IMG/VR virus record: IMGVR_UViG_3300045051_000720 | Coordinates: 124,001 to 188,000 of that record | DNA: 64,000 nt | Strand: one strand, 5' to 3' | In this document: positions 4,583 to 26,846 of the stretch, one piece after another | Numbering within the stretch: position 1 is the first letter of the stretch | How the letters are laid out: the number at the start of each line of letters is the position of its first letter | Translations under genes and position numbers: made by a program | The notes under the pieces: generated by a model | What the model saw: only the letters and a program-made list of their open reading frames with translations | The model's database searches: none | What the model was told of the DNA's origin: nothing

Positions 4583-4687
4583 GCACTCCTATACACCCAC
4601 GGCGCGCCAGTTTATGACCACCCTCGGCGCGGCGCAGGTCGACATGGGAGTGGATGATCCCGCCAAGTCCAAGGCGCAGCCACTGTG

Positions 4688-5644
4688 ATGTCCTTCGACG
4701 ACCTCATTCGCGCGCGTCTAGAGAACGTCCGTACCACCTCGGACGGATGGACCGCAGCGTGTCCTGCATGTCGCGCTCAAGGCGCGGACAAACAAGGCAA
4801 CCATCTCAGGATCTGGCGTCACAGTAACGCGTTCAACTGCGCCAAGGCCGGTCCTGAGGACCGCGAGCACAACAAGGTGGTGCGCGCGATTCTATATCAG
4901 GATGCCGATCCTGACACCCTCGCCTCCCTCGATCTCCAGATCATCGATCCCGAACCCAAGCTGGAGGTCGAGAAGGTCTATCCCGACGAGTGGCTCACCC
5001 GACTGGTACCAGACCACCGCTATTGGATCAACCGGGGCATCAGCGAGGAGGTGTTGAGGAGGATGGAGGGGGGGCTTGCTCCGCCGGATGAAAAATCAAA
5101 GTTGTCAGGAAGATATGTGCTACCCATCCGCGATGAGAAGCATCGTATCGTTGGGTGGACAGGACGACTCGTCAGCGATGCGTCGTTTGGTCCCAAATGG
5201 AAACACCTATGTAAGGCGTCTAAGGTCGTCTATCCTATCCATGTGACCGGCGATGCCATCCGCGCGACGCAAAAGGTAGTGCTCGTAGAATCGCCCGGCG
5301 ACGGAATGTCTCTCGCGTCCGGGGCGGGCATGTGGAATTGGCTTATTCTCCTCGGCCTAAATCTCAATGCGCGAGTGTTGGGCCTGCTTGTTAGTGTCAA
5401 CCCCACCCACATCATCATATCGACCAATGCCGATACCGAGCGTGTCAACAAAGTCACTGGGGCTGTGACCCATCCGGGTCAAGACGCTGCGAACAAGCTG
5501 CGTGCCAAACTGATACCCTTCTTTGGCGAGGAAAGAGTGATCGTGAGGTTCCCTCCGGCGGCCATCGGGAAGGATTGGAATGAGATCTTGCTCAAAGCCC
5601 CTGACGAGTTGGCGGCGTTCAAGGCAGAGATCGATGCTTTATGA
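4688..5644 (+). CDS. DNA primase (Zn finger plus TOPRIM)
   Basis: CPAC..HLRI..C zinc finger; YVLPIRDE..IVGWTGR; TOPRIM VLVESPGDGMSL and STNAD. Confidence 0.85.
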   Translation: MSFDDLIRARLENVRTTSDGWTAACPACRAQGADKQGNHLRIWRHSNAFNCAKAGPEDREHNKVVRAILYQDADPDTLASLDLQIIDPEPKLEVEKVYPDEWLTRLVPDHRYWINRGISEEVLRRMEGGLAPPDEKSKLSGRYVLPIRDEKHRIVGWTGRLVSDASFGPKWKHLCKASKVVYPIHVTGDAIRATQKVVLVESPGDGMSLASGAGMWNWLILLGLNLNARVLGLLVSVNPTHIIISTNADTERVNKVTGAVTHPGQDAANKLRAKLIPFFGEERVIVRFPPAAIGKDWNEILLKAPDELAAFKAEIDAL

Positions 5645-6042
5645 AAACCCCCTATCAACGCTGGACCGAACGCACCCAAGATGGCCGCAAGATGGCGGCT
5701 GGTTGGGTCGGTGCCAAGCACACGCCCACCACCGAGTGCGAATGTGACGTGCGTGGCCATCCCAAACGCAGTATGCTTACGTGGGCGCATGGCCATTGGT
5801 GGTATATGCACACCGATAGCTGCGGCGGTATCCCTTACTGGCACTGCGAGGGAGATAAGCGTTACGCGTGGAAACGTGGTTGTTGGGGCTGTAACGCCAG
5901 CATCCATCGAGCTGACCTGTTGCTCAAAGCAGTCGTGTTGGACAGTGAGAGCGCGAAGGCTGAGCTGCGCGCCATGGGGTGGAAGGGCGACTATAACCCC
6001 TATGCCGGTCCCGGCGCGGACAGGAGTTGGCTGCATCCATGA
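5641..6042 (+). CDS. Hypothetical Cys/His-rich protein
   Basis: ATGA-coupled on both sides; several Cys/His pairs. Confidence 0.65.
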   Translation: MKTPYQRWTERTQDGRKMAAGWVGAKHTPTTECECDVRGHPKRSMLTWAHGHWWYMHTDSCGGIPYWHCEGDKRYAWKRGCWGCNASIHRADLLLKAVVLDSESAKAELRAMGWKGDYNPYAGPGADRSWLHP

Positions 6043-6971
6043 CCCACCCCATCCGTATTTCAGCGAGCCGCCTTAAGCAGCTCAAGGAGTGCACGATGGC
6101 GTTCTATCTCAAGGAGGTGGTCCGTTTACCTGACTCCTCCCATTGGAAGGCCCGACTTGGCACGTTGGCCCACCTCGTGTTTGAGTGCGTTCTCCACCCG
6201 CGCCGCGCCGCGCTGTTAGAACGCATCTTGCGCGCCGAGGCCTTCCAGATCGAGGACTATCCCGCGCTGGTGCGCCTCGTAGAATGGCAGTTCCGCCGGG
6301 AGGACATCACGCTGTCCAGTGTAGCCGAGGTGGGGGAGCTACTACAGGTGGCCTTCCATTGGGTCAAACCCTATTTCATCAACGCAGAGGGGGTGTTCAC
6401 GCCGCCGCCGCGCTATTATCGTGAGCACGAGTTCAAACTGGTGGTGGGAGATGCGGTGGTTAAGGGTTATATTGACCTGCTGATGGTATGGGAGGATCGG
6501 GCCTTGGTCGGGGATCTCAAAAGTCAACGCGAGAAATGGACGCGCGCTGACGTGCCTAACAACGTGCAGGCCGCCATCTATGCCCTAGCTACGTATCGCG
6601 AGTTTGGTCTCATCCCGGCGGTTGAGTTCATCATGCTGCGGCACCCGCCGTCTAAGCGGTGTCCTCGGAATCACATCCAGCGTGTTGAAGCCCCGTCTCC
6701 AATGGCCCTCGTCGGGCTCGAAGACTATATCGAGAGCATGTATCGGGTCGTCAACCAGTTCAGCTATGAGGACGCCTGCTCGCACCCCCATGATGACGAG
6801 GGTTTTTGCACCCGAGTTTGTCAGTTCCACAAGCCCTTTACCTATCATGCCGTGCTCAAGGACGGCGAGGTGGTGCGTACTTATTTGGAGACCCAGACTC
6901 CCGAGGTCAAGAAGGGTGAGACACTAGAGCAGAGGAGGCACGAAGGGTGCTTGCTCAGGTGGCGTGGTTAG
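6039..6971 (+). CDS. PD-(D/E)XK nuclease (RecB/Cas4-like exonuclease)
   Basis: ISASRLK..C, GTLAH, EHEF, VKGYIDLL..GDLKS, QAAIY, C-terminal C..C. Confidence 0.85.
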   Translation: MTHPIRISASRLKQLKECTMAFYLKEVVRLPDSSHWKARLGTLAHLVFECVLHPRRAALLERILRAEAFQIEDYPALVRLVEWQFRREDITLSSVAEVGELLQVAFHWVKPYFINAEGVFTPPPRYYREHEFKLVVGDAVVKGYIDLLMVWEDRALVGDLKSQREKWTRADVPNNVQAAIYALATYREFGLIPAVEFIMLRHPPSKRCPRNHIQRVEAPSPMALVGLEDYIESMYRVVNQFSYEDACSHPHDDEGFCTRVCQFHKPFTYHAVLKDGEVVRTYLETQTPEVKKGETLEQRRHEGCLLRWRG

Positions 6972-6974
6972 GGC

Positions 6975-7003
6975 TTGACTCCACCGGTCAACGTGGGTAG
7001 AGT
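6975..7003 (+). promoter_or_regulatory. Promoter with TTGAC-N7-GTCAA palindrome
   Basis: TTGACT-17-TAGAGT, 6 nt before ATG 7010. Confidence 0.75.
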
Positions 7004-7009
7004 GCCGTC

Positions 7010-8506
7010 ATGCGCTCTTATCCCAATGCCGCCGCAGCCCGCGCGGCCTGTATAAATCGTGGTGACGCCCAGTGGTTGCTCCCTATCGAGGGACGCCAAC
7101 CAGTCACGCTCATCGCCAACGACGAGATTTTTGTCGGGTTCGATGACAAGGTGTTCGAGCAGATCGTGAACGCCGCCGAGATGCCGGGCGCAGAGCGGGT
7201 AGTCATTGGGGCTGACGCGCACGTTGGCTTTGGCATCTGTGTGGGTACGACCGTGGTGTCGGAGACGCATGTTTATCCTCCCGTCGTGGGACCGGATGCA
7301 TGTTGTTCCCTCGCATTCCTCCAAACCGACCTGCCTGAGGATGCTATCAAGGACAAAACCGCGCGTCGTGCGCTCATCAATGCCATCACGGCGCGTATTC
7401 CCACGGGACTCGGCAATCGTCAAGCACCCAAGGCGCGCACGCTCAACCTTGAGGTACTGGTGTCAGTGGTTTGCGGAGGAGCGAGCGGGAACAATCTCCG
7501 CCTGTTAGGTATCCCCGAGGAGTGGGCGACTAAGTGCGAGCGGGCGGTCTATGGTCCTTCATTCGCGCGCCTGTCTGACCGCTTGCACGTCATCACCTGC
7601 GAACGCCCCGAGCTGTTACCTAAGTTGTTGGCTTTGGCGAGCTTAGGGGCCGGCAACCATTTTCTCAGCGGCGACATTGTGGACCTTGGCCGCATTGCCG
7701 GTACGCAAGGTCTCCCTGACGAGTTTGGTCTGCGTCAGGGTTGCTTCGGCTCGCTGTCGCATTGCGGGTCCAGAGGGTTTGGGTTTCAGTTGATGGCCTA
7801 TCATGAGCGCAAACTCAAGGCTCATTTTGAGCGGTGGGGCATTCCGTTTACAGGCGGCGATCACCACCTCATCTGCGCGCCCGTCGACACTCCTGAGGCG
7901 CGTGACTACATGCTCGACCTCGCGCTCGCGGCCAACTTCGCAGTCGTTAACCATCTCCTCATCCAAACCTATGTGTTGGAGGCCGTGCAGGAGGTTTTCC
8001 CCGGCGCGCGGGGCGACTTAGTCTATCACATCAGCCACAACGTGGGTCAACAAGAGGTCCTTGACGGACGACTCAAGTGGGTGTTCCGCAAGGGTGCGAC
8101 GCGGGCTTTCCCGGCAAACCATCCGGGGCTCAAGGGTTCTATCTATGAACGGATCGGTCATCCCATCCTACTGCCCGGCAACGCGCGCGATGGTAGTCTC
8201 ATCATGGTGGCACGACAGGGTGCCAAGACCGCCTCGTTTTCGGTCAACCACGGGGCCGGTAGATCGTTGGGGCGCAAAGAGGCTAAGCGGCGGTTGGTTC
8301 AGAAGGAGGTCGACCAAAATCTGCTTGACTCCGACGTAATGCACAATGGGCGGACTTACCCACTCGACGAGGCCCCGGGCGCCTACAAGGACTTCGATGA
8401 GGTCACGAGAAGCGTTGTGGCAGCAGGCCTTGCTACGGCTGTTGCGCGACTGACGCCGCGATTCGTTATCAAGGACTGTGATCCGTCACCGGAGGGCGCG
8501 GCATGA
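7010..8506 (+). CDS. rtcB: RtcB-family RNA ligase
   Basis: DAHVG, VGPDACC, LGAGNHF, HCGSRGFG, HNV, RKGAT, PGN, NHGAGR, EAPGAYKD. Confidence 0.93.
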   Translation: MRSYPNAAAARAACINRGDAQWLLPIEGRQPVTLIANDEIFVGFDDKVFEQIVNAAEMPGAERVVIGADAHVGFGICVGTTVVSETHVYPPVVGPDACCSLAFLQTDLPEDAIKDKTARRALINAITARIPTGLGNRQAPKARTLNLEVLVSVVCGGASGNNLRLLGIPEEWATKCERAVYGPSFARLSDRLHVITCERPELLPKLLALASLGAGNHFLSGDIVDLGRIAGTQGLPDEFGLRQGCFGSLSHCGSRGFGFQLMAYHERKLKAHFERWGIPFTGGDHHLICAPVDTPEARDYMLDLALAANFAVVNHLLIQTYVLEAVQEVFPGARGDLVYHISHNVGQQEVLDGRLKWVFRKGATRAFPANHPGLKGSIYERIGHPILLPGNARDGSLIMVARQGAKTASFSVNHGAGRSLGRKEAKRRLVQKEVDQNLLDSDVMHNGRTYPLDEAPGAYKDFDEVTRSVVAAGLATAVARLTPRFVIKDCDPSPEGAA

Positions 8507-10625
8507 ACACCCTCACTAAGGACGGACTCATTGGCTCCTCGGGCCTCGGTGTTGACGGGTCTGTTTTCTTCCACATCGCCGCCAACTACGCCGCCGGGCG
8601 CGGCAAGTGCTTTGTCGAGTGGTTTGGCCGAGGCGATTCGGCGCCCGACTGGAAGCGCATGACCCTCAAACGCGCGCACAAGGAGGGGAGACACATCATC
8701 GCCTGTGCGCATTGTGACAAGCCCGCCATCTCGTTGGACCATCTCTGGCCTTATCACAGCGAGATGAACTACTGCGCGGCGCATCGCGGGGCTTATCAAG
8801 CCTCACTCAAGGCTTGACTTGACCATCCAACCCCGCTACTCTGCCCCTAATGGACCTGACCGATCACTACACCACCCTCCTCGCTGAACTCGACAAGACC
8901 CTTTCGCTTGTCCGGTCCTTCTGGATCGAGTCGCGGGACGAGTTCGAGAAGCGGAAGAATCAGAAACGGCTGGATGAGCTACTCGATGAGCGGTTGCGCC
9001 TCATGCGTGCGCGCGACGCGGCAGAGGCCACAAAAAGACCGGTAGAGACACCCTTTGTCAAAAGCGTCAAGGTCAAGAAGGAGGCGAGATGACCCCCTTC
9101 GCCTACCATGTGACCGTTTGCTCGTGGGGCGAGATCGATTGGGAGAAGATCACACCCACCCTGCGCGCCGCCGTCCAGCGCATCATCACTGATTGCGAAC
9201 CCGACTGGGTCAGTCGCGAGAAGATTGATTTGCGCGCTTGCTTTGCTGATGAGACCGAGGTTAAGCTGGACATGTCGCTTCTCCGCGCCAAGGTCGATCT
9301 GGACATGGATGCTATCCGCGCCGAGGCTGAGGCCGCCATTGCCGAGAATGCGCGCGAGCAGGCTAAATGGCTCAAAACCATCAAGGGCACGGTCACCGGC
9401 TCGCCGTGGCTGTGCGATATGGGGTTGGACGATGTGGTCGCGGGTATGGTAGAGCAGCGCGAGTGGCGGTGGAAGACGATGGAGGAGATGGACTGGGACG
9501 CGTTGGAGGCATCGCGAGTATGATCACCCCCAAAACCGACGCCGATCTCCTCGCGTGCTATCGCGAGATGGTACTCAATCTGATGGGTCGGTTAGACCCC
9601 TATGGTCTGCCTCTCACGCCCGATGAGCAGGCCACTTTTATCCGCAGCGCCCTTTGGCAGGCCAAAACGATTCATGACAGCGAACCCTTCCTGCGCGGGC
9701 GGGTGGTGGAGACGCTGGACAAGGCAGTCGCTTTGAATCGACCCAAGACCAAGTCTTCATGAGCGAACCCCTCTCCTCCACCGATCCCCTCGTCATCGCG
9801 ACCCATGCCAAGTGGCTCGCTGCCGCCGAGAAAGGTCCGATTCCGGTCATCACCTGTGACGCAGATCTGATGGGCTATCTCGGTTTCACCGCGCGCGAGC
9901 AAGACTTGATTGCCACAGCCGCCAAGGAGCGCGGCTTATCCGTGCCCGAGTGGATGGCCCAAATCGTGGGCCGTCTCGCTAATCTGGGAGCCCCTTTTGA
10001 CTGTGGGCACCGCGGATTCCTATCCATCTACCCTCGCCCAGACGGCGGCACCCAATGCACCGCCTGCTCCAATGCTGCGCGTAATCTCGTTTCATGACCT
10101 TCAACATCAACAACCATGTTCGTGTCCGTCTCACGGACCTCGGACGCCAGATTCACCGCGCCGACTACGACGACCTCGTCAAACTCTGTGGTCATGTGCC
10201 CTATCCCTACACACCCGTTGCCGAGGACAAGGACGGATGGTCTGAGTGGCAGGCGTGGTGTCTTATGAGCCTGTTTGGCAAGCACTTGGGCAACGGGCGT
10301 CCGTTGCCGTTTGAGACTGTCATCCGCATTGAGGCTGTAGAGGAGACTGCAACAGAGCCATCATGAGCGAACCTAGTCAGGGTTGGGCTCCTCGCCTCGT
10401 CGCCAAGTGGTGCGACAACCGCGCCGCGCGCACCGAAGCCAAGCTGATCAAGCGGTGCCGCAGTGCCTATCGGGCTGGACCACTGGTGGAACCCGTCAAC
10501 CGCTTTGCCGATCTACTGGAGGAGCAGGTCAAGCGGAACACCGCCGAGTGGCGCAGGTTAGCCACACTGATGCGCGCGCAAGCGGACGAAGCCGCGACCG
10601 CGGGAGTGGCACCGAGCGTTCTAAC

Positions 10626-11919: not shown

Positions 11920-12710
11920 GTCGCGTACCCCGATCGTTAGTAGAGTTGTTAGCCATGCCCGCGCCCCATGCGACCCATATCGTCGAGGCGTCGGCCGATG
12001 AACCGCGCTTCAGTATCAAGGCCGGCGACCGTTTCGAGGCTTATCCCTATGTCATGGACCCAACCGACAAATGGGTGTTGGTGCGTCGTGTGAGTGATGG
12101 TTATGAGCCCCACTGTACCGCCTATCGCAGTCAAGTCAAGATCGTTTCACGCTTATGACCCAACGCTATATCCTCGACATCGATCCCAACTGTTGCTATG
12201 TTCTCGTCCCGGTAGAACACCGCCGCAAATGGTTGCGGTGGGTCAGCGCGAACGATCAAAACGCCGACTACACCCTGCCCGCCTACGCGATCCCTCTGCG
12301 CGGCCGGTGTCGGGGTGATGGCTCGGCGGTGACGTTCACGGACCCGGCTGACCTCAAAGGCAATCCCCTCACATGATCCCCGATACCCTCATCACCAAGC
12401 CCGGGCGGGTTGCCCGTCTCTGTCAGAACCAACGATTGCTCACCAAACTGGCCGACCAGATTGGCGAGGCCCTGATGAAGGGGGATTGGTTGGCCATTGA
12501 GGGACTGGCTGATCAGGTCGTGGTCGTGGGCAACGACCTCGGCCTCGACGCCTATGAGGTAGACAAGGTCGAGAGGGGGGCGCGGTGAGCATGATGCCCT
12601 GTCTTTGTCTCACATTATAGCATTACCGTAACTCGTTTGGATGGCTAGACTTATATCGTATCCATCCGCTTTGTGTATCACAATATGTTCTTGTCGGTGT
12701 ATAGCGTGAT

Positions 12711-13682
12711 ATGCCACGCAAACGTGAGCGTTTTATCAAATGTGTTTACCTCGTCGGGTTCAAAGGTACACACAAGGTGTACATCGGGTCTAGCACACGT
12801 TGGCCATACCGGGCACGCGAACATCGCACAAATTTGCGTTTGGGTAAGCATCATAACGTCTATCTTCAACGCGCATATGCCGTCTACGGTCCTGAGGTAT
12901 GGGTTGAGGAATTAGAGCGTTTTGACGATGTGATAGCGATGCGCTACGGCGAACAAAAATGGATGGCTTTCTACCATAGTGACGACTCGAACTACGGTTA
13001 CAATCTTGTCCCAGAGGTAGTCAAATTCGGGACCTGTGGTTATCAATATACCCAAGCACAACGCACCGCGATGAGTCAGAAAAACAAAGAGAGGATGCAA
13101 GATTCAAAGGCTCGCCAAAAGGTGGCTAGTGGAGTTGCTCGCGTGTGGCGATACCAACCAGAGGTTTATCTTCAGAATCGAGTCGCGGCCAAAGAGTATG
13201 ATCTTTACGATCCGGAGGGATGCCGCGTGCATATCTGTGATCTTGGTCGATTTTGTCGAGAGCGCGGCTTGGTTTACGAAAAAATGTATAAGGTCGCTTC
13301 GGGGGTACGGATTGAATATGAAGGGTGGAAGCTGTATCCTGACCGTAAGAACAAGGTGAAGAAACCTTATGCGCTTATTAGCCCGTGGGGCGAGCGTTTT
13401 GAGGGCGTCGGGCTGCGCGCGTTCGCACTAAAGATGGGTTTACATCCTCGTACTATCGCCCTCGTCGTTCAAAAGCGAGTTAAGACGCACAAAGGATGGC
13501 GATGCGCTGACGTATCCGCCGATTGCGCTTTGGCCCATAAGGGACGCGACTATACGCTTATTGGTCCGTCAGGTGAGGAGATTCGTATCAATAACCTCAC
13601 GGCCTATTGCCGTAAGCACGGTTTATCATATGATATTATTCGCCACGGTGGACTGTCCCGGGGGTGGAAACGTAAAGAATGA
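12711..13682 (+). CDS. GIY-YIG homing endonuclease with three C-terminal DNA-binding repeats
   Basis: VYLVGFKGTHKVYIGSS..R..H, GYNL; three Y.L..P.G..L..FC...GL..GW repeats; looks AT-richer than flanks. Confidence 0.9.
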   Translation: MPRKRERFIKCVYLVGFKGTHKVYIGSSTRWPYRAREHRTNLRLGKHHNVYLQRAYAVYGPEVWVEELERFDDVIAMRYGEQKWMAFYHSDDSNYGYNLVPEVVKFGTCGYQYTQAQRTAMSQKNKERMQDSKARQKVASGVARVWRYQPEVYLQNRVAAKEYDLYDPEGCRVHICDLGRFCRERGLVYEKMYKVASGVRIEYEGWKLYPDRKNKVKKPYALISPWGERFEGVGLRAFALKMGLHPRTIALVVQKRVKTHKGWRCADVSADCALAHKGRDYTLIGPSGEEIRINNLTAYCRKHGLSYDIIRHGGLSRGWKRKE

Positions 13683-14949: not shown

Positions 14950-14987
14950 GAGGTGATGACGCCCTGTGAACAGATGGAGGAGACGCA

Positions 14988-15641
14988 GTGATCGGCAGTG
15001 GTCTCACCCGCTATAGCGACGAGGTCTTTCTTTGCTGGGACACCGAGTCGTGCCATCCATCGCTTAATCTTGCTTACGCGCGCCCGTGGGAGCTGACCTA
15101 CGCTCTCGCCACGCTCAAGGGTGGGATTCAATCCATTCATACCCACCTGATCCGCTGGCCCAACATGGTGCTGACGGAGGACAATCCTTCCCTCGCCCAC
15201 TTTGATCCCGTCCGCTACGAACGCGAGGCGCGCGACCCGCGCGAGGTGTACGGAGAGTTCGGCCCGCTCCTGCGCAAGCATCGCTCGGTGTTTCACGGGG
15301 GGTTGGGGTTCGACGTGTACGTCGAGGGCGTCTGGCGGCGCGAGATCGGGCTGCGCGCCGACTATGAGTGGCTGCGCAATCCGGGGTGTCTGGACACCAA
15401 CTGCCTGTCCAAGGCGCTAAAGGGTCAGTGGACCCCCGACACCAGTTCGCCCGAGGCGTTTCTCGCGTGGCAGTATCGGGCTTATCATACCTTTCTCCCC
15501 AAAGGCACCAAGACCAAGTTGGGCGATATGTGCGTTGAGCTAGGTATCGAGTTTGATGCCAAGCAGGCGCACGGGGCCGAATATGACGTTACCCGCACGA
15601 TGGCCCTGCTCAAGGAGCTTGTGTTCAAGATCGAGGTATGA
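14988..15641 (+). CDS. DEDDh 3'-5' exonuclease (DnaQ/epsilon-like)
   Basis: WDTES, FHGGLGFD, LDT, HGAEYDV; GGAGG upstream of GTG; coupled to dnaE. Confidence 0.85.
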   Translation: MIGSGLTRYSDEVFLCWDTESCHPSLNLAYARPWELTYALATLKGGIQSIHTHLIRWPNMVLTEDNPSLAHFDPVRYEREARDPREVYGEFGPLLRKHRSVFHGGLGFDVYVEGVWRREIGLRADYEWLRNPGCLDTNCLSKALKGQWTPDTSSPEAFLAWQYRAYHTFLPKGTKTKLGDMCVELGIEFDAKQAHGAEYDVTRTMALLKELVFKIEV

Positions 15642-18184
15642 CCGCCTTCACTAGCCAGTTCACCCCGCTCGCGTTCCCCCATTTCGGGATGGTCAAGCTA
15701 CCATCCATCACGATCACACCTGAGCAGAAGGCCTCGGTCGGTCTTCCTGCCACCGCGACCAATCAAGCGTTCCTGCTCGCCTTGGCGCGGGCGGGGTATA
15801 CCAAACGGGAGGCGGTCATCCCTGTTCAGCGACGTAAAGAATATGGTGATCGGGTTAAACGCGAGCTGGCGACGTTCGAGGAGCTTGGGTTCACGGACTA
15901 CGTGTTGCTGGTCTGGCTGGTCATCAACAAGGCGCGCGAGCTGGGGGTGTTCATAGATTACGGAAGAGGCTCGTGCGCTGGGAGTTGCGTTTTTTGGCTG
16001 CTTGGCATCACGGGCGTCGATCCCATTGCCAAGCGCCTCCTCTTCGAGCGGTTCGTCTCGCGCGTGCGCTCCAAGAAACAGGTCATCGACGGCGAGACCT
16101 ACCTCCAAGGCGACCTGATTGCCGACGCCGACCTCAACCTCGGCACCGGTCTTGACCAGATCGTGGCGTGGCTGGAGACCCTCTACCCCGGCGCGGTGTG
16201 TAAGATCGTGACCCACGGCACCCTCAAGGGCAAGGTGCTCATCAACGACGTGTACAAGACCATGGAGGGGGCCTCGCAGGAGGAGTCGCAGCGCATCTCG
16301 GGGATGGTCGAAACCAAGTACGGGGTGGTTGAGGATGTGGCAGACGCCTACGAGAAACACCCCGACTTCAAGCAGTGGGCCGACAAGCACAAGGAGACCT
16401 ACGAGGTATGCCTGCGCCTGCGTGATCTGATCCGCCAGAGCGGTGTGCACGCCAGCGGCTACGTACTCTCCGCGCGCCCCTTCGATGGCTTTCTCCCCAT
16501 CCAGCTGAGCAAGGACAAGGAGATCATCTCGTGCTACGAGATGGAGGACGTGTGCAACTACGCCGTCAAGCTGGACCTACTCGGACTCATCACCAACAAG
16601 GTCGTCAAGGAGGTGATCGACGCGACGGGGGTGGACATCACCACGCTTAATCTCGACTCCGACCCGTTCATCTACGACCGTTTTCAAGATGGCAAGCTGC
16701 TCCCGTGGGGGCTATATCAGATCTCGGCGGACTGCGCATATGGCGTGACTGCCGCCATCAAGCCCAAGAACATATTCGAGCTGAGCGACGTGAACGCTAT
16801 AGCCCGCCCGGGAGCCCTAGCGTACCTCTCGGGCTACGTCGAGAACAAGGCGCAGTGCCCGCACCCGGTCTTCGAGACCATCCTCAAGCCGACGCGCTTT
16901 TATTGCTTATATCAGGAACAAATGATGCATATGGCTGTGGCTGTGGGGTTTACATTGGATGAGGCCGAGATCCTGCGCAAGATCGTGGGCAAGAAGCAGG
17001 TCGAGAAGGTCAAGGAGTGGAAGGACAAGATCTACGCGCGCGTGGCGCAGAGCAACCTGCCCGCCAATCTGGGCGACATCCTGTGGAAGATCCTTGAGGA
17101 CAGCGCGTCGTACTCGTTCAATCTGTCGCACTCCCTCTCCACGAGCTACCTGACCGCCCTCACGGTCTACCTCAAGTACCGCTACCCGAAGGAGTTCATG
17201 TGCGCGTGCTTGAACGCCGCCAAGGACATTGATGAGCGTCGTCAGATCGGGCAGGAGCTGGGCCAGTTGGGTATCAAGATCCTCCCCGCCGACATCATCA
17301 AGTCGCGCCCGCGCTTCACCATCGAGGGCGATGGTATCCGCTATGGGTTGGAAGCGGTGCGCGGCGTCAAGAGTTATGCCGACAAGCTGGGGTCGTTCAA
17401 CCGCGTGTTCGAGTCCAAGTTCACCATCTTCGAGGTTGCCAAGGCGGCCAAGATCAACATCTCGGTCCTGACCTCGCTCATCTACGCGGGTTGCCTCGAC
17501 TCCATCATCTATGATGGCTCATCCCGCGCCAAGCTCGCGCTGGAGGCCCAGCTTTACAACCTCTTGACACCCAACGAGAAGGTGCTCGCCAAACGGTATG
17601 CCGACGAGTACAAAGACGACCTGCTCGCGCTGGTGAGGGGTATCGGCGAGAAGAAGAACGAGAAGGGCAAACCGCTGATCCAGCCATCGCGCATGACGAC
17701 GCTACGTCGGGACTACGCCCCGTGTTGGGAGCAGTACACTGCCAACGCCAAGAACGAGCTGCTCACGAGCTACGTGATGGAGCGCCACCTGTTGGGCTTC
17801 TCTTACTCCGCCACGCTCCATGGGTGCTATGCGTCGCGCATACCAACCCTCATCCCCCTCAAGGACATCGCCCAACACAAGGGCACCAAGGAGGTCTTCA
17901 AGTGCGTGGCTATCGTTGAAGAGGGGAAGGTACACATCAGCCAAAAAGGTGCGCCCTATTATCGGGCAGACGTGTTTGACGACGACACCAGTGCGCGCAT
18001 CATGCTGCATGGAGCAGAAAGAGTCGAGTCGTGCAAGGGGTATAACGGCGACCTCCCCAAGGCCGGTGACATCATCACCCTCACGGGCCAGCTATCCGCG
18101 GATGGCAAGATGATCTTCGCCGATAACATCGTCGTGCAGCCCGCGCTCGTCAAACTCAAGAAGACCGACGCCCCCGAGATATGA
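15638..18184 (+). CDS. dnaE: DNA polymerase III alpha subunit (family C) lacking the PHP domain
   Basis: GRGSCAGS, ADADLN catalytic aspartates, GVHASG, KLDLLGL, ARPG, LYQEQMM, SYSFNLSHS..YLKYRYP; C-terminal OB fold. Confidence 0.93.
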   Translation: MTAFTSQFTPLAFPHFGMVKLPSITITPEQKASVGLPATATNQAFLLALARAGYTKREAVIPVQRRKEYGDRVKRELATFEELGFTDYVLLVWLVINKARELGVFIDYGRGSCAGSCVFWLLGITGVDPIAKRLLFERFVSRVRSKKQVIDGETYLQGDLIADADLNLGTGLDQIVAWLETLYPGAVCKIVTHGTLKGKVLINDVYKTMEGASQEESQRISGMVETKYGVVEDVADAYEKHPDFKQWADKHKETYEVCLRLRDLIRQSGVHASGYVLSARPFDGFLPIQLSKDKEIISCYEMEDVCNYAVKLDLLGLITNKVVKEVIDATGVDITTLNLDSDPFIYDRFQDGKLLPWGLYQISADCAYGVTAAIKPKNIFELSDVNAIARPGALAYLSGYVENKAQCPHPVFETILKPTRFYCLYQEQMMHMAVAVGFTLDEAEILRKIVGKKQVEKVKEWKDKIYARVAQSNLPANLGDILWKILEDSASYSFNLSHSLSTSYLTALTVYLKYRYPKEFMCACLNAAKDIDERRQIGQELGQLGIKILPADIIKSRPRFTIEGDGIRYGLEAVRGVKSYADKLGSFNRVFESKFTIFEVAKAAKINISVLTSLIYAGCLDSIIYDGSSRAKLALEAQLYNLLTPNEKVLAKRYADEYKDDLLALVRGIGEKKNEKGKPLIQPSRMTTLRRDYAPCWEQYTANAKNELLTSYVMERHLLGFSYSATLHGCYASRIPTLIPLKDIAQHKGTKEVFKCVAIVEEGKVHISQKGAPYYRADVFDDDTSARIMLHGAERVESCKGYNGDLPKAGDIITLTGQLSADGKMIFADNIVVQPALVKLKKTDAPEI

Positions 18185-19976
18185 CCCGTCCCACCTTCGT
18201 CACCTGTCAAGACCGCCTCACCCAACTGGTCGCCGAGGACCAGCCCGAGGACTACCTCTTTGACGAGCAACCCATTCGGGTAGGCAACGCCAAGCTGACC
18301 TCCTTCCTCGTTCACTACACCACGCGCGGCGGCGCACCCCGCGAGGCGCGGCTGGTGTTCGGCGGCGATCAGAGGCTGCTCTTCGCCTTCGTCATCGACC
18401 CCGGGATGTGTGGCCACGCGCTAGAGGAAGGCTTCGACGCGCAGAAGGCGGACGAACTGGCCACATTGCGCGTGGACGGGTTGGACGCGGTTGTGGGGTA
18501 CCTGAAGGGACTTGACACGCGCGGCTAACGCGGCTATGATGAGCACATGACCTTCCATCATCCCGTGATCACTCCCGACGCCGACGAGGCGGATGAAAAG
18601 CATTGGCGGCGCACGGCTGTCGGTGAGCAGATCAAATCAGCGTGGCAGGCCTATATCCTGCTTCCCCAACCTCACTGGCGCATCAGTGCCTTCTACACCT
18701 CGGACCGTGAGGTCGTATCCGGGCGTACGTCTTACAGGGCACCAAACAGCCTCAAAGCATGGTGCTCGGTTCTGCCTGAGCTAACGCGCAAGTGGGTGCG
18801 GCGATGGAGGGGGTTGGCGTGAAAAAGCGGGACATCGACACCCTTGTGGGGTATGCCATCCATGACTGGTGGCAGGTTGGTGACTACAGTCTATGTTTAC
18901 GTACCACCGGCCCGTCTGGCGGTGAGGCACATTGGGACATCCAGTTGGACGATGATGGTGGGGGCACCGGCAACGCCAGCCACGCTTATTTTGGCGACAT
19001 TCGTCTAAACGACCTGCTCGGTCACACCATCACCGCCGCGCGCCACGAGGACGAATCGTCCTATGGTGTGCTGTTGATCCTTGAGGCCGGCGATAAACGG
19101 GGGTGTATCCCCATCGTCCACGACCACAACGGGTACTATGGCTTCAGCTATGAGGTCGTGCCTTTCGTGCCATGAAGCAGTACTGCATTGTCTATGACCT
19201 CGACGGCGAGGCTTATGTCATACCCGCCACCAAGCGCAAGGCATGGGACACCTTCTTGGCTATTCCTGTGGACGACGAGCGCAAGGTACCCAAGTGGGCC
19301 GAGCGCATAGATAGCCCACTCTCAATCACCTTGACACGATGACTACCCACGAGTTCGCCCGTTCTCTCCTCGCGCTGCCTGACCTGCCGGTCTTCCATTT
19401 TGATCCCTCCCTCGCCGGGCTGGACGAGGAGATTGATCACTCACTCACCGAGCCCGTGGCCGAGGTGTGTCGCCCTGACCGCTGGGACAAGCGATGGAAG
19501 CCCTTCGTGACCATCAGCTCGGTCGAGGACCGTACGGAAGAGGCGGATGGCATCGACGCGATGCGCGACGACCGCCAGCGGCTCGATTGGGTGTTGGCCA
19601 TCCTCGCCACGCGCGGTACGGATGGGTTGAGAGACATCATCCCGTGGGAACCACCCTGCCCACCTGACCGCGATAGTCTCGACATCGCGATGGGGCGGTG
19701 TCCGACCCCCTAATGGCCGTCGTCGCCGACTTCATCTGCTCGGTGTGTCAGACCAAAAGGCACGAGCTGGTCGTGTGGGGCGAGTACGGCACGGTGTGTG
19801 CGGTCTGTCGGACTGAGCAGGTCAAGGCCGAGTCCTCCGCTAAACGCATGACCCTCAAGGGGTTGACGGCGTTGACGGTTGAGGAGAGGTTGGCGAGGCT
19901 AGAGGCGGAACTGTATGACCTCCCCGCGCTGCGGCGGCGAATCGAGGGTTTGGAAGCGGGTCAGGCTCGGTACTGA
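18181..19976 (+). other. Run of small hypothetical CDSs
   Basis: 18181-18528, 18547-18822 (promoter TTGACA-17-TATGAT at 18512-18540), 18819-19175, 19172-19342, 19339-19713, 19713-19976; all coupled by overlaps. Confidence 0.75.
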
Positions 19977-20019
19977 CGCATCACCCCATCGTGATGCGAC
20001 GATGGGTGTATATCCTCTT

Positions 20020-20790
20020 GGCCACGCGCTCTAGTAGGCGGCGGTGGAGTGTTACCGAGGCGGGAGACATCGAGCTACCGCCAAGTCTACCCCTATAATC
20101 CCCGCCGCGCTGGGTGTATAGTGGACGACGGACTAACACCCGCCGCGAGACACGTGTGTGATAACGCGATACTCGCTATGCCCAATCTCGATGCCGGAAG
20201 TCCCGGAGTGTCGGGCGCAGTTCGACGATGTTCGCAGCGCATATCAATAGACTGTCGGGGTAGCTCCCCTTCACCGCTCGCGACCAGACGGCTTGCTGAA
20301 AGGCAAGTGGCGTTCCTCGGATGACCCTCGCGCGGCTCTGACACGACTGACCTGTCCAGTGATGGATGGGCGAAACGGCTGGTTCGGGCAGTCCTGACTC
20401 GCGCATGGTCTAGTAGGTCGTCCCTGAAGCACCATGCTCACCTCGTCGCCCGGTTAACGGTCACGCTTGTCTTTCGTATCGGCAGGCAGCCACCGCACCC
20501 CAGTTGGGTTTCAAGCCCCTAGAGAGAGGTCGCTGGATGGAAAGGGCGATGTTGCGCCTCACGGTGCAGATGCTGCGGTAGATGTCGGCTAAACCGTTCC
20601 CCGGTCCCGCTTTGCTACGTTGGTCTCCTAGTCTCACCCCTTTTGGGGGTGGTGTCTTTTCCGACCCTAGGACCCAATGTAGCCATCCAGCGCGCCCTTA
20701 CGGGCGAGCAGGGAAGAGGGCTTCCCGTTCAGGGTCTGCCGACCCCTACCCAGCCCCTCAAACCCCAAAGCGGGAGGGTTAAGGCTAGGT
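20020..20790 (+). ncRNA. Candidate large structured non-coding RNA
   Basis: No credible ORF in about 860 nt. Many stems: CTTGCT-GAAA-GGCAAG, CACCCC-TTTT-GGGGGTG, CGCCC-TTAC-GGGCG, GGGAAG-AGGG-CTTCCC, and long-range CGCTGGATGG/CCATCCAGCG. Ends and strand are inferred. Confidence 0.6.
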
Positions 20791-20800
20791 GTGTCCACAC

Positions 20801-20829
20801 TTGACTCTCTCGGTCAACCCGCCTACCCT
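20801..20829 (+). promoter_or_regulatory. Promoter with TTGAC-N7-GTCAA palindrome
   Basis: TTGACT-17-TACCCT, 7 nt before ATG 20837. Confidence 0.75.
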
Positions 20830-20836
20830 AGGGTCT

Positions 20837-21430
20837 ATGGCTAAGGCTCCCGAGACAAGCGTGTGCGTGTTCAGTGACGAGAACCCGCCGCGGTACCGAT
20901 ACCTCCTAGACCACACCGTCGATGACACGGTCCCGAGCTACGCTCGAAAAACGGTCATCTTTATTCTCGCCAACCCCTCGGTCGCCAATCAGACCCAGCT
21001 AGACCGCACTCTGCGCCGCGCGCGAGGCTTCACCAAACGGTTAGGGGGTCATCATATGGCCATCCTCAACGCCTTCGCTTTCGTCAGCCAAGACCCGGCG
21101 GGAATGCTCAACGCAGATGACCCGGTCGGCCCGCTCAACGACCAGATCATCGCCAAGACCATCGCGCGCGAGGGGGTCCTTCATGTCATCTGCGGGTGGG
21201 GTCATCTGGGTACGCACCGTGGGCGCGACAAGGAGCTGATGGCGATGCTGCCGGGGCAGCTGTCCTGTTTGGGGCTGACCAAGGGTGGACAGCCTCGACA
21301 CCCCCTCTATCTCAAGGCCGACGCTCCTCTCCTGCCCTTTGGGTACGTGGTCAATCCGAGCTTGACATCACCATCCAACTCCGGTACGGTGAGCGCATGT
21401 CCTCCTCCCCCGACCTCATCCTCTGGGTGA
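20837..21430 (+). CDS. DUF1643 family protein
   Basis: RYRYLL, FILANPSVA..D.T, ILNAFAF..DP, GWG, TKGGQPRHPLY. Confidence 0.85.
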   Translation: MAKAPETSVCVFSDENPPRYRYLLDHTVDDTVPSYARKTVIFILANPSVANQTQLDRTLRRARGFTKRLGGHHMAILNAFAFVSQDPAGMLNADDPVGPLNDQIIAKTIAREGVLHVICGWGHLGTHRGRDKELMAMLPGQLSCLGLTKGGQPRHPLYLKADAPLLPFGYVVNPSLTSPSNSGTVSACPPPPTSSSG

Positions 21431-25148: not shown

Positions 25149-25516
25149 CTATCATCGGGTTGCGCACCGCGACTGACTATGCCATCCTTGATGGGGTTAT
25201 GGCACGCCATTTTACCGCCCCGATGGGCAAACAAGACGATACGGTCGAGACCATCGTGACCGAGGTGATCAGCGGCGGGGCCGCAGGAGCAGACACCCTT
25301 GGCGCTCGCTGGGCTACTGAGCGCCAGATCAAGTTGACGGTGTTCAAGCCCGACTGGAACCGCTTCGGCAAGCGTGCGGGGTTCGTGCGCAACGAGGACA
25401 TCGTCGCGGCGGCGGATGTCGTGCTGGCGATTTGGGATGGCTCGTCAAAGGGCACCCAGAACAGCCTCTCTATCGCCAAGCGTCTCAAGAAGCCCACTAT
25501 CATCATCTACTCATGA
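25139..25516 (+). CDS. SLOG-family (YspA/DUF2493-like) protein
   Basis: LAIIG, ISGGAAGADTLGARWA, PDW..GKRAGFVRNEDIV, AIWDGSSKGT. Confidence 0.88.
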   Translation: MRLAIIGLRTATDYAILDGVMARHFTAPMGKQDDTVETIVTEVISGGAAGADTLGARWATERQIKLTVFKPDWNRFGKRAGFVRNEDIVAAADVVLAIWDGSSKGTQNSLSIAKRLKKPTIIIYS

Positions 25517-25570
25517 AACTCCCTTCCCATATCCTCAAGCAGGTCAAGTGGTTCGAGCATGGCACTATCC

Positions 25571-26812
25571 TCATTTGACGTGAGTCAAACGCTGACATTC
25601 CCGCTTCACAGGCCCCACAGTCGGGGCCTCCCCGGGCGTATCTTTCCGGCGTGCCTGCCGGTAGTTTTCGGCCAGCAAGCTGGTCGAAGAAGTGTCTTGC
25701 GTACGAAACGCCATAGCGCGGATATTCCGCGCGGCGTTGACATCACGGTCGTGGGTTATACCACAGACGCATGTCCAGTTTCGGTCGGCGAGAGTCAAAT
25801 CGCGCTTGATGTGACCGCATTCGGAGCACGTCTTGGACGACGGCTCGAAGCGACCTATCACGCGGACATTGACGCCATACCACCTAGCCTTGTACTCGAT
25901 CTGACGGCGCAGTTCGCGCCATCCTGCGTCCTGAATCGACCTGTTCAGGGCTCGCCCGCGACGAGATGTCGTGAGCATATCCGACACCGACAGATCCTCG
26001 ATGCACAGCGTGGTGGCGTGGCTCTTGCGCACCAGATAGCTGGACACCTTATGGAGGTTGTCGTTGCGGATGAAAGAGATACGTTCGTGGGTCAAGGCTA
26101 CACGTTGCCGCGCCTTGTTCCGATTCGCCGAGCCCTTGACCTTGCGCGACAGGCGGCGTTGTCGAATCTGAAGGCGGCGCAGGTACCGCTTCAACGCGCG
26201 CGGGTTCTCGAACCGTTGACCATCGCTCGTCACGATCAAATCCTTGAGACCAAAGTCAAGACCAAGAGCATGGTTCTCCTCGGCGAGTGGCGGCGTAGGC
26301 TCTGTCAACCCATCCTCAACCAAGATCGAGACGTAGATCTTGCCCGTTGCAACGCGCGAGACGGTGGTAGTCTTGATCTCACCGTCAAAACGGCGGTTGA
26401 AGCACCCCTTGAGGCCCTCACGGAAGCCGATCAGACTCACACGCTGAGTGCCGAAGTCAACTTTGGTCTTCTGAGGCAGCTGAAAGGAGTCATGTTGACC
26501 TTTGGCCTTGAAACGCGGGAACGAGGCTTGCCGATTGAAAAAACGCGTAAAGGCGGCATCAAGGTTGCGCAATGCCGATTGCAGAGCTGCCGCGGGTACC
26601 TCCTCCAACCACTGCGTTTCTTCTCTCTCTTTCAACTCGGGCAGATGTGCCTGAAGCTCGTAAAGCGATACACTCACCCCCGCCTCCATATATCGCGCCG
26701 TTTTCTCGGCGAGAGCCCAGTTGTAAATCCAGCGGACGCAACCAAACACCTTAGCCAGTTTAACTTGCTGGTCGGGGGTGGGGTAGATACGGTAGCGGTA
26801 TGCTTTGAGCAC
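25571..26812 (-). CDS. tnpB: TnpB RNA-guided endonuclease (IS200/IS605 family)
   Basis: KAYRYRIYP..FGCVRWIYN; RuvC GLDFGLKD, IEDL, RDVNAARNI; CSEC/CVC zinc finger; GTG start. Confidence 0.95.
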   Translation of the reverse strand: MLKAYRYRIYPTPDQQVKLAKVFGCVRWIYNWALAEKTARYMEAGVSVSLYELQAHLPELKEREETQWLEEVPAAALQSALRNLDAAFTRFFNRQASFPRFKAKGQHDSFQLPQKTKVDFGTQRVSLIGFREGLKGCFNRRFDGEIKTTTVSRVATGKIYVSILVEDGLTEPTPPLAEENHALGLDFGLKDLIVTSDGQRFENPRALKRYLRRLQIRQRRLSRKVKGSANRNKARQRVALTHERISFIRNDNLHKVSSYLVRKSHATTLCIEDLSVSDMLTTSRRGRALNRSIQDAGWRELRRQIEYKARWYGVNVRVIGRFEPSSKTCSECGHIKRDLTLADRNWTCVCGITHDRDVNAARNIRAMAFRTQDTSSTSLLAENYRQARRKDTPGEAPTVGPVKRECQRLTHVK

Positions 26813-26846
26813 GCTACGCTATACACCGAGCGTAACAGTGGCGATG
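25580..26846 (-). mobile_element. Solo-tnpB IS200/IS605 (IS1341-like) element
   Basis: Right end ends in TCAC after a GGCCCC/GGGGCC hairpin; TTTAC lies just outside the inferred left end; no tnpA; removing it joins the flanks in frame. Confidence 0.6.

What the first reader, a model, noticed from the sequence alone, without database searches (positions are those of the whole stretch)
4588..26828. Second promoter-like motif, GGTGTATA-N7-start, shared by three nuclease units and the ncRNA
GGTGTATA lies exactly 7 nt before the start of the RHH-nuclease cassette (minus strand, near 4590), the GIY-YIG gene (12696-12703) and tnpB1 (minus strand, near 26820). The last two share the 13-mer CGGTGTATAGCGT. 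It also occurs at 20005 and 20113, at the 5' end of the ncRNA candidate. I see no shared -35. Inference: a separate promoter class, for an alternative or phage sigma factor or a late phase, that unrelated selfish nucleases have each adopted. My search was by eye and not exhaustive.
Basis: partly seen in the sequence, partly recalled or inferred. Interest (0 to 1): 0.6.

Follow-up and report, generated by a model that had tools for sequence, protein, structure and literature searches.

The report
Phage late-gene promoter used by selfish nucleases
GGTGTATA is most likely the core of this soil jumbo phage's promoter for virion (late) genes, probably read by a sigma factor the phage encodes, and several mobile nuclease genes sit directly behind their own copy of it; this is a new example of a known strategy, with no transcript data yet.

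Summary
GGTGTATA occurs 5 times in the window (0.5 expected) and 26 times in the 219-kb phage genome (2-6 expected). About 22 of the 26 copies lie between genes or at gene ends and point at the next gene.

It is not specific to nucleases. Most copies head the terminase, portal, capsid, tail and tRNA units. Uncultured relatives keep it at the same intergenic positions while the flanks diverge. It is the most enriched 7-mer upstream of genes.

About ten sites, two of them in the window, also carry ATAAWY exactly 12 nt upstream.

The 7-nt spacing occurs at four sites, all mobile nuclease units; two more nuclease units have 9 nt. It matches the leaderless layout of the genome's roughly 49 canonical TTGACA-N17-TAnnnT promoters, where the start codon lies 4-9 nt after the -10.

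The phage encodes an ECF-like sigma factor next to the terminase gene, behind a conserved host-type promoter. The likely cascade is host sigma, then phage sigma, then GGTGTATA late promoters. The closest known parallel is phiEco32 gp36 (tAATGTAtA, starts 6-8 bp downstream).

No RNA data exist, so start sites, timing and the sigma assignment are inferred.

The parts
4590..4597 (-). GGTGTATA core, 7 nt before the ATG of the RHH-like ORF
4610..4615 (-). Upstream ATAAAC element, exactly 12 nt 5' of the core (-35-like)
   Evidence: about ten genomic sites have the same spacing
4418..4582 (-). 54-aa ORF with a ribbon-helix-helix look (no Pfam hit); first gene of a reverse-oriented two-gene cassette
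3549..4421 (-). 290-aa protein with repeated HTH modules. Its C-terminal HNH-like motif was read by eye only. Its start overlaps the stop of the small ORF.
   Evidence: HTH_28, HTH_23; the nuclease call is an inference
12696..12703 (+). GGTGTATA core, 7 nt before the ATG of the GIY-YIG-like ORF; no clear upstream element
12711..13682 (+). 323-aa ORF with a GIY-YIG-like N-terminal motif seen by eye; Pfam gives no hit
20005..20012 (+). GGTGTATA core, 29 nt after the stop of the upstream gene, at the start of a 0.86-kb stretch with no called gene
20095..20100 (+). ATAATC element, exactly 12 nt upstream of the core at 20113
20113..20120 (+). GGTGTATA core in bipartite form, inside the same stretch with no called gene
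19977..20836 (+). If the two sites fire, it is transcribed, but its nature is unresolved.
   Evidence: No Rfam match; fold z-score 0.10; no nhmmer match in eight related loci
26820..26827 (-). GGTGTATA core, 7 nt before the GTG of TnpB1; no upstream element
25571..26812 (-). TnpB1 (OrfB_IS605, Cas12f1-like TNB and HTH_OrfB domains), a lone reverse-oriented gene
20801..20836 (+). For contrast, a canonical promoter of the other class: TTGACT-N17-TACCCT-N7-ATG, leaderless

Best explanation
GGTGTATA is the -10-like core of a promoter class specific to this phage lineage. It drives the packaging, head, tail and tRNA units, which are the presumed late genes. Transcription would start about 6-8 nt downstream of the 8-mer. 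Where the start codon lies 7-11 nt downstream, the mRNA is leaderless or nearly so, the same layout as the genome's many canonical TTGACA-N17-TAnnnT promoters. A subset of sites adds a -35-like ATAAWY at a fixed 12 nt upstream. The most likely reader is host core RNA polymerase carrying the phage's ECF-like sigma factor (245 aa, genome 15442-16179, outside the window). That gene lies two genes upstream of the terminase gene, behind a conserved host-type promoter, which gives a cascade of host sigma, phage sigma, late promoters. Six mobile nuclease units carry their own copy at 7-9 nt from the start codon: a LAGLIDADG gene, two small-ORF-plus-HTH-nuclease cassettes, two GIY-YIG-type genes and TnpB1. 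Four of the six are reverse-oriented islands in the + strand blocks, which read-through from neighbouring genes cannot express. Their product would therefore be made only from their own transcript, late in infection. Shown here: enrichment, position, orientation, conservation, and the presence and fold of the sigma-like protein. Inferred: promoter activity, start sites, timing, and which sigma reads the motif. As a rough split, I put about 0.8 on the motif being a late-class promoter and about 0.5 on this particular sigma being its reader.
For: 1. Enrichment. The genome has 26 copies against 2-6 expected. TGTATAG and GTGTATA are the most enriched 7-mers in the 70 nt upstream of genes, read in gene orientation.
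2. Position and strand. 19 of 26 copies fall in the 18% of the genome not covered by my gene calls, and 4 of the 7 scored as coding lie at gene starts or ends or at a conserved internal start. All of these point at the next gene or RNA on the same strand.
3. Users. Downstream units include the operon that holds the sigma gene, the portal-side gene after the terminase, an 839-aa gene and its nested 388-aa frame, the gene before the capsid-like gene, the tape-measure gene, several tail genes and the tRNA array.
4. Conservation. In relatives whose sigma homologue is 54-67% identical, GGTGTATA is invariant at orthologous junctions while the flanks diverge, and TATAAA-N12-GTGTATA is conserved before the capsid-side gene. 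Structural-module loci of relatives hold 7, 6 and 4 copies against fewer than 1 expected. Four replication-module loci hold 0, 1, 0 and 0.
5. Need for a promoter. The lone reverse-oriented genes need their own promoter and show no TTGACA-type one.
6. Not a primary-sigma -10. In the TATAnn register the last base is T in only 2 of 26 copies. To my knowledge primary sigma depends strongly on that T.
7. A candidate reader. The 245-aa protein hits Pfam Sigma70_r2 above its cut-off. In the model, residues 8-88 superpose on ECF sigma-2 domains (Z 8-8.8, rmsd 2.2-2.5 A) and residues 160-245 on sigma-4 domains (Z 7.9, rmsd about 2 A). Nearly all top matches are sigma factors. Its operon has a conserved TTGACA-N17-TAnnAT promoter.
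8. Precedents. phiEco32 gp36 promoters are a single element, tAATGTAtA, with starts 6-8 bp downstream (PMC8948821). ECF promoters use an AAAC-type -35 and a CGTA or CGTC -10 (PMC5758882). T4 intron homing endonucleases are made from late promoters (PMC2988022).
Against: There is no transcript evidence: only DNA runs hold this phage. The host is unknown, so its own sigma repertoire cannot be excluded. 'Late' is deduced from gene function, not measured. The fold matches have middling Z scores for helical domains, and Foldseek E-values were 0.015 or weaker. The sigma-like family shows no detectable sequence relation to phiEco32 gp36. The gap between AAAC and GTA is about 2 nt shorter than I recall for typical ECF promoters. 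Three copies (genome 38963 +, 102386 +, 110918 -) lie inside genes or antisense to them and look like chance. The site at genome 214338 overlaps a canonical TTGACA-N17-TATCAT promoter, so not every copy need belong to the class.
Confidence: 0.65

Rival explanations
1. The motif is an extended -10-type promoter read by the host's primary sigma factor, with no phage sigma involved. A phage protein would disable -35 recognition late in infection, so that -35-independent GGTG-TATA promoters take over. This is how Thermus phage P23-45 works with gp39.
For: TATA fits the first four bases of a -10 hexamer, and its distance to start codons equals that of the canonical promoters in this genome. P23-45 middle and late promoters are of the extended -10 class and survive gp39 (PMC7403470). 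One site (genome 214338) merges with a canonical TTGACA-N17-TATCAT promoter.
Against: The base at the -7 position of the TATAnn register is T in only 2 of 26 copies. The TG lies directly against TATA, not one base away as I recall for a classical extended -10. A fixed-distance ATAAWY element at about ten sites is not expected for a -35-independent class. The phage lineage conserves a two-domain sigma gene two genes upstream of the terminase gene.
Confidence: 0.2
2. The motif is read by the second phage sigma-like protein (223 aa, genome 64951-65622), and the 245-aa protein serves another class or another role.
For: That protein has weak Sigma70 region 2 and region 4 hits and matches a PHROG sigma family. 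It also sits behind a canonical promoter, at genome 66920.
Against: No third enriched upstream motif was found that the 245-aa protein could read instead. Only the 245-aa gene was shown to travel with the motif-rich packaging module in relatives. Conservation of the 223-aa gene was not examined.
Confidence: 0.1
3. The motif is not a promoter. It is an operator for a phage DNA-binding protein, or an RNA processing or stability signal at the 5' ends of units.
For: Its reverse complement, TATACACC, differs by one base from the TAGACACC -35 box of the early-type promoters at 157-204 kb. Both are often followed or preceded by TAGGG or CCCTA, which could hint at one binding protein. An RHH-like ORF follows one site.
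Against: The motif is strictly strand-oriented toward genes. Its geometry matches a -10 element. It is the only candidate signal in front of the lone reverse-oriented genes. It is linked to a co-conserved sigma gene.
Confidence: 0.04
4. The occurrences are chance or a by-product of composition.
For: Three intragenic or antisense copies look random. The order-5 Markov expectation rises to 11.7, but that model is largely fitted to the sites themselves.
Against: No shuffle of the window reached 5 copies. The genome has 26 copies against 4 for the reversed word. The motif is conserved at orthologous sites in relatives with 53-60% GC.
Confidence: 0.01

Closest known systems
[quoted passage not shown]
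   Same: A single strongly conserved -10-region element containing TGTATA, read by a phage-encoded ECF-like sigma on host core polymerase. Starts lie 6-8 bp downstream, and the promoters sit in front of middle and late genes (PMC8948821). The 7-11 nt motif-to-start-codon distances here fit that geometry.
   Different: No detectable sequence relation between the two sigma proteins (hhalign probability below 1%). gp36 lacks region 4, whereas the protein here models with a sigma-4-like domain, and some sites have a -35-like box. The 5' half of the motif is GG here rather than AA. The phage is a 219-kb lambda-J-type tailed phage from soil, not a coliphage podovirus.
Salmonella phage 7-11 gp47 late promoters (GTAAtg-N16-aCTA)
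   Same: A bipartite late promoter read by a phage sigma that has region 4. It lies at genome positions equivalent to those of related phages even though the motif itself differs.
   Different: Different sequence elements, and only a subset of sites here is bipartite.
ECF (group 4) sigma promoters, e.g. B. subtilis sigma-W (tgaAAC -35, CGTA -10)
   Same: An AAAC-type upstream box and a GTA-containing downstream box (PMC5758882). The protein has a two-domain sigma-2/sigma-4 architecture.
   Different: The gap between the boxes is about 2 nt shorter here, by my recollection of the typical spacing. The 8-bp core is longer and invariant. Most sites lack the upstream box. The protein carries a roughly 70-residue linker with five invariant cysteines, which I do not know from typical ECF sigmas.
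T4 late promoters (TATAAATA with gp55) and late-promoter control of T4 homing endonucleases
   Same: A single -10-type late element. Intron homing endonucleases are produced only from transcripts that begin at a late promoter directly upstream of the gene (PMC2988022).
   Different: T4 restricts translation with an RNA hairpin over the ribosome-binding site. Here the proposed restriction is a leaderless start codon at the transcript's 5' end. No gp55, gp33 or clamp relationship was tested.
Thermus phage P23-45 middle and late promoters (extended -10 class)
   Same: Late promoters that work without a -35 box (PMC7403470).
   Different: Those are read by the host primary sigma after gp39 displaces sigma-4. 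Here the -7 T is missing and a phage sigma is present.

Membership tests
Bacterial-type promoter (-10-like element upstream of a transcription start) | Over-represented, strand-specific, and located upstream of genes | tested here: met
   26 copies against 2-6 expected; 19 of 26 lie outside my gene calls and about 22 lie between genes or at gene ends, all co-oriented with the next unit; top-ranked upstream 7-mer
Bacterial-type promoter (-10-like element upstream of a transcription start) | RNA 5' ends a few nucleotides downstream | not testable with these tools
   Only DNA runs hold the phage and no RNA run was found
Bacterial-type promoter (-10-like element upstream of a transcription start) | Conserved at orthologous positions in relatives while flanks diverge | tested here: met
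   Alignments A2 and A3; copy counts in loci L102-L107
Late (virion-gene) promoter class | Sites concentrated in front of packaging, head and tail genes | tested here: met
   Sites lie before the portal-side, capsid-side, tape-measure and tail genes. Relatives show enrichment in structural loci and none in replication loci.
Late (virion-gene) promoter class | Activity late in infection | not testable with these tools
   No time-course data, and the host is unknown
Primary-sigma (sigma-70/sigma-A) -10 hexamer TAnnnT | Conserved A at -11 and T at -7 | tested here: not met
   In the TATAnn register the sixth base is T in 2 of 26 copies. The genome's 49 canonical promoters were retrieved with a pattern that requires that T.
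Sigma-70 family protein (the 245-aa candidate reader, genome 15442-16179) | Region 2 (core binding and -10 recognition) | tested here: met
   Pfam Sigma70_r2 at 28-29 bits against a cut-off of 24. Model residues 8-88 superpose on ECF sigma-2 domains, Z 8-8.8, rmsd 2.2-2.5 A.
Sigma-70 family protein (the 245-aa candidate reader, genome 15442-16179) | Region 4 (-35 recognition) | tested here: inconclusive
   No Pfam region 4 hit. Model residues 160-245 superpose on sigma-4 domains at Z about 7.9 and rmsd about 2 A, which is a middling score for a small helical domain.
Sigma-70 family protein (the 245-aa candidate reader, genome 15442-16179) | Binds core RNA polymerase and directs initiation at GGTGTATA | not testable with these tools
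   Needs biochemistry. No complex prediction was attempted because the host polymerase is unknown.
phiEco32 gp36 sigma family | Sequence homology to gp36 | tested here: not met
   hhalign of alignment A1 against gp36: probability 0.2%, 16 aligned columns
Leaderless mRNA arrangement | Start codon at the distance from the -10-like element where transcription would begin | tested here: met
   Spacing of 7 nt at four sites, 9 nt at two, 10-11 nt at four. The 49 canonical promoters place ATG or GTG 4-9 nt after the hexamer. The 5' ends themselves were not mapped.

The most novel reading that the evidence does not exclude
A previously undescribed lineage of soil jumbo phages runs its late programme with its own ECF-like sigma factor, which carries a five-cysteine (probably zinc-binding) linker and reads GGTGTATA, with an optional ATAAAC box. 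Mobile nucleases of four unrelated families have each converged on a leaderless copy of this promoter. Transcription start and translation start then coincide, so the nuclease is made only late and only from its own transcript. That would be a hairpin-free equivalent of the T4 homing-endonuclease control.
Probability: 0.4. Interest if true: 0.55.

Novelty: new member of a known kind. Interest (0 to 1): 0.42.

Why it matters
The result gives a ready-made promoter map, with early-type and late-type classes, for an uncultured 219-kb soil phage lineage that has no close cultured relative. It also yields a testable sigma-promoter pair that could serve as an orthogonal expression part. It shows how homing endonucleases and a TnpB element plug into a phage's temporal programme: they carry the phage's late promoter in a leaderless layout. 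For annotation, it warns that start codons in this lineage should be called from promoter geometry rather than from Shine-Dalgarno sites.

Tried and rejected
- Close relatives: megablast of 8 kb of the window against cultured phages found nothing. tblastn with DnaE found only matches below 30% identity. A DnaE-based scan of IMG/VR found no relative. Relatives were reached only through protein word searches plus contig look-ups.
- RNA evidence: the run search found only three DNA metagenome runs (rhizosphere and landfill) and no RNA run. Read laying was therefore not used, since contigs cannot show 5' ends.
- tRNA explanation: the GGTGTATAGC-TAGG sites are not tRNA genes. The 14 tRNAs lie elsewhere.
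- Rfam: no family matches in the window at gathering scores, and only chance-level hits appear in 19500-21000.
- ncRNA candidate: fold z-score 0.10 for 20127-20790, and no nhmmer match in eight related loci. I could not support it as a structured or conserved RNA.
- Single-subunit RNA polymerase (PF00940): no hit, but the control genomes did not ring either, so the result is uninformative.
- Homology of the sigma-like family to phiEco32 gp36 or to the phage's second sigma-like protein: none detectable.
- Host assignment through TnpB1: the best matches are Acidobacteriota/Blastocatellia MAGs at about 40% identity and actinomycetes at about 35%, too distant to name a host.
- Whole-record motif counts in relatives through the genome search handles: those records are not held.
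- The two small-ORF-plus-HTH cassettes are not close paralogues. They share only weak HTH similarity.
- GAACGAA was considered as a third promoter class. It sits 0-15 nt before start codons inside an operon, so it is more likely a translation or junction signal.

Full report
**What the window is.** The window is bases 124001-188000 of a 219,464-bp virus record that is about 96% complete and about 60% GC. It has no close relative among cultured phages. The only sequencing runs that hold it are DNA runs: two rhizosphere metagenomes and one landfill metagenome. The window covers the replication module, with DnaB-like helicase, RtcB, DnaE-type polymerase and an AAA ATPase, followed by the start of a long block of small + strand genes.

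**Checking the observation.** GGTGTATA occurs five times in the window at the stated coordinates. The expectation is 0.53, and none of 100 shuffles reached five. The 7-nt distance to the start codon is exact for the RHH-like ORF (ATG 4582, minus strand), the GIY-YIG-like ORF (ATG 12711) and TnpB1 (GTG 26812, minus strand). The shared 13-mer is real. The sites at 4590 and 20113 carry ATAAAC and ATAATC exactly 12 nt upstream.

**The genome-wide picture.** The whole genome has 26 exact copies, against 4 for the reversed word and 2.3-5.6 expected under Markov orders 1-4. Nineteen copies fall in the 18% of the genome that my rough gene calls leave uncovered. Four more lie at gene starts or ends or at a conserved internal start. 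All of these point toward the next gene or RNA on the same strand. Three copies (genome 38963 +, 102386 +, 110918 -) lie inside genes or antisense to them, which is about the number chance would give. In an unbiased count of 7-mers in the 70 nt upstream of all called genes, TGTATAG and GTGTATA rank at or near the top, ahead of the -35 and -10 words of the other promoter classes. Close variants (AGTGTATA and others) add further sites with the same context.

**Which units carry the motif.**
- The plus-strand block at 13.8-31 kb holds a membrane protein, the sigma-like gene, an ERCC4 nuclease, the terminase, a portal-side gene, an 839-aa protein and a capsid-like protein.
- The minus-strand block at 31-63 kb holds a lambda-J-type tail fibre, the tape measure and other tail genes.
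- Motif sites head the operon at 13805, the gene after the terminase (20420), the 839-aa gene (23238) and a nested 388-aa frame inside it (24590).
- They also head the gene before the capsid-like gene (25803), the tape-measure gene (44339) and a run of tail-region genes (38595, 47349, 49779, 50831, 51727, 52886, 62659).
- Two copies precede the minus-strand array of 14 tRNAs.

The motif is therefore first of all the signal of the virion-gene modules.

**Conservation in relatives.** Homologues of the sigma-like protein (49-70% identical) lie on syntenic uncultured contigs. In those loci GGTGTATA sits at the same junctions. One is after the terminase. Another is 10 nt before the ATG of the large gene. 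A third is inside that gene, before a conserved internal ATG. A fourth is before the capsid-side gene, as TATAAA-N12-GTGTATA. In alignments of these junctions the 8-mer is an invariant island in otherwise diverged non-coding sequence. Structural-module loci of relatives hold 7, 6 and 4 copies against fewer than 1 expected. Four replication-module loci of relatives hold 0, 1, 0 and 0. That contrast explains the copies in our replication-module window: they belong to inserted or unusual units, not to the replication genes.

**The other promoter class, and why 7 nt.** A strict pattern was searched: T[TA]GACN, 15-18 nt, TAnnnT, 4-9 nt, then ATG or GTG. It finds 49 sites, almost all on the coding strand directly at gene starts, and almost all with a 16-17-nt spacer. 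These look like primary-sigma promoters whose transcripts begin at or next to the start codon, that is, leaderless mRNAs. A TAGACA/TATCCT variant, often preceded by a CTAGGG-N6-CCCTA inverted repeat, dominates the block of small genes at 157-204 kb. If TATA in GGTGTATA is read as the start of a -10-like element, a 7-nt gap puts the start codon 5 nt after the hexamer. That is the same geometry as these canonical promoters. Across the GGTGTATA-type sites the gap is 7 nt at four, 9 nt at two, 10-11 nt at four, and 13-67 nt at the rest. So the 7-nt gap is the leaderless form of the class, not its definition.

**The selfish units.** All four 7-nt sites and both 9-nt sites head mobile-type nuclease units:
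- a LAGLIDADG gene (genome 90040-90975, minus strand);
- a small ORF plus HTH-repeat protein (120017-121196, minus strand);
- the RHH-like ORF plus HTH/HNH-like protein of the window;
- the GIY-YIG-like gene of the window;
- TnpB1;
- a GIY-YIG/NUMOD3 gene (216194-216901).

Four of the six are reverse-oriented islands inside + strand blocks. They need their own promoter, and no TTGACA-type one is present. Related phages show the same habit at a GIY-YIG gene (9 nt) and at a reverse-oriented 134-aa gene (7 nt). It is not universal. An HNH gene and a LAGLIDADG gene sit inside late operons with no site of their own. TnpB2 (window 34340-36109) has a canonical TTGACA-N17-TATACT promoter. A LAGLIDADG gene in one relative also has a TTGACA-type promoter.

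**A candidate reader.** The genome has a Sigma70 region 2 match above Pfam's cut-off in a 245-aa ORF at 15442-16179. Sixteen homologues share five invariant cysteines in a central linker. The AlphaFold model has a mean pLDDT of 76, with both end domains above 90. It retrieves almost only sigma factors. Residues 8-88 superpose on ECF sigma-2 domains (Z 8-8.8, rmsd 2.2-2.5 A). Residues 160-245 superpose on sigma-4 domains (Z 7.9, rmsd about 2 A). The operon containing this gene has a TTGACA-N17-TAAGAT promoter, with TTGACA-N17-TATCAT at the same place in two relatives. This fits a cascade in which the host sigma makes the phage sigma, which then reads the GGTGTATA promoters. A second, weaker sigma-like ORF (223 aa, genome 64951-65622) also exists, so the assignment is not unique.

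**Why not the host primary sigma.** In the only register that gives T and A at the first two hexamer positions, the last position is T in 2 of 26 copies. To my knowledge primary sigma depends strongly on that T. In addition, the invariant GGTG lies directly against TATA.

**Known parallels.**
- Phage phiEco32 uses a single element, tAATGTAtA, read by its ECF-like sigma gp36, with starts 6-8 bp downstream (PMC8948821). The two proteins are not detectably related.
- ECF promoters pair an AAAC-type -35 with a CGTA or CGTC -10 (PMC5758882).
- The rival model is the Thermus phage P23-45 scheme: a host sigma reading extended -10 promoters after a phage protein disables -35 recognition (PMC7403470).

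**How the nuclease arrangement would work (inference).** If transcription starts 6-8 nt after the motif, the 7-nt sites yield mRNAs that begin at the start codon. Such a codon would be used efficiently only when it lies at the 5' end. The nuclease would then be made only from its own late transcript, not from any longer RNA crossing the gene. This would reach the same outcome as the T4 intron endonucleases, which are translated only from late-promoter transcripts because longer RNAs hide the ribosome-binding site in a hairpin (PMC2988022).

**The ncRNA.** The two sites at 20005 and 20113 open a 0.86-kb stretch with no convincing ORF. I found no Rfam family there. Folding stability is not unusual (z = 0.10). 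The related loci in hand hold no homologue. If the promoters are active the stretch is transcribed, but I cannot say what it is.

**Limits.** Gene calls are my own rough codon-usage calls. The host is unknown; TnpB1's best matches are about 40% identical, in Acidobacteriota MAGs. No RNA data exist, so promoter activity, start sites, timing and the sigma-promoter pairing are all inferred.

**Verdict.** It is a new member of a known kind, of moderate interest.

Noticed in passing
window 2047, 6975, 8814, 14921, 18512, 20801, 21362, 26914, 29969, 33220, 41949, 42516, 43204, 43564, 53463, 55277, 58803, 60411, 63939 (starts of the -35 box, + strand): Canonical T[TA]GACN-N16-17-TAnnnT promoters with ATG or GTG only 4-9 nt after the -10. 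There are 49 in the genome. Most transcription units therefore look leaderless, which matters for start-codon calling and hints at a host rich in leaderless mRNAs.
   Followed up: partly
window 33220-64000 and genome 188-204 kb, e.g. window 43564, 55277: A subclass of these promoters uses TAGACACC as its -35 box and TATCCT as its -10, often preceded by the inverted repeat CTAGGG-N6-CCCTA. TAGACACC differs by one base from the reverse complement of GGTGTATA, and both are often next to TAGGG or CCCTA. Whether this is coincidence or a shared binding protein is unresolved.
   Followed up: partly
window 44042-47786 (+): GAACGAA(C) recurs 0-15 nt before the ATG of about ten of a dozen copies in front of consecutive small genes, in a stretch with high AT skew. 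It may be a non-Shine-Dalgarno translation signal or a repeated gene-junction cassette.
   Followed up: no
window 34340-36109 (+): A second TnpB-like ORF (589 aa from my call, with a Cas12f1-like TNB domain) sits behind a TTGACA-N17-TATACT promoter and has a TTG start 7 nt after the -10. The two TnpB genes therefore use different promoter classes.
   Followed up: partly
L009:15442-16179 (+) (genome 15442-16179, outside the window): An ECF-like sigma factor with a roughly 70-residue linker carrying five invariant cysteines. It is conserved at 49-70% identity on at least 15 uncultured contigs and always lies two genes upstream of the ERCC4-terminase pair.
   Followed up: yes
L012:4951-5622 (-) (genome 64951-65622): A second sigma-like ORF (223 aa) with weak region 2 and region 4 hits and a PHROG sigma-family match. 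Its promoter class is unknown.
   Followed up: partly
L010:4590-4597 (+) (genome 24590), and L102:19882, L104:18864: A GGTGTATA site inside the 839-aa gene lies 11-14 nt before a conserved internal ATG (the product begins MATPS). It would give a nested 388-aa product, as with scaffold or protease nested genes.
   Followed up: partly
L012:17638-17645 and 18635-18642 (-) (genome 77645, 78642): Two GGTGTATA sites lie upstream of the minus-strand array of 14 tRNA genes (genome 70578-75572). The tRNAs may therefore be expressed with the late class.
   Followed up: no
L102:6658-6669 and L104:8371-8382: At the divergent junction of the two structural blocks, relatives have a near-palindrome, RGTGTATACACY, where own-strand and opposite-strand motifs overlap. 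It looks like a back-to-back pair of promoters.
   Followed up: no
L112:1694-4597 and 7755-9311: A 196-kb relative has two stretches of 1.5-2.9 kb with no called gene near its AAA ATPase gene. These are possible large non-coding regions analogous in position to window 19977-20836, though with no sequence similarity.
   Followed up: no
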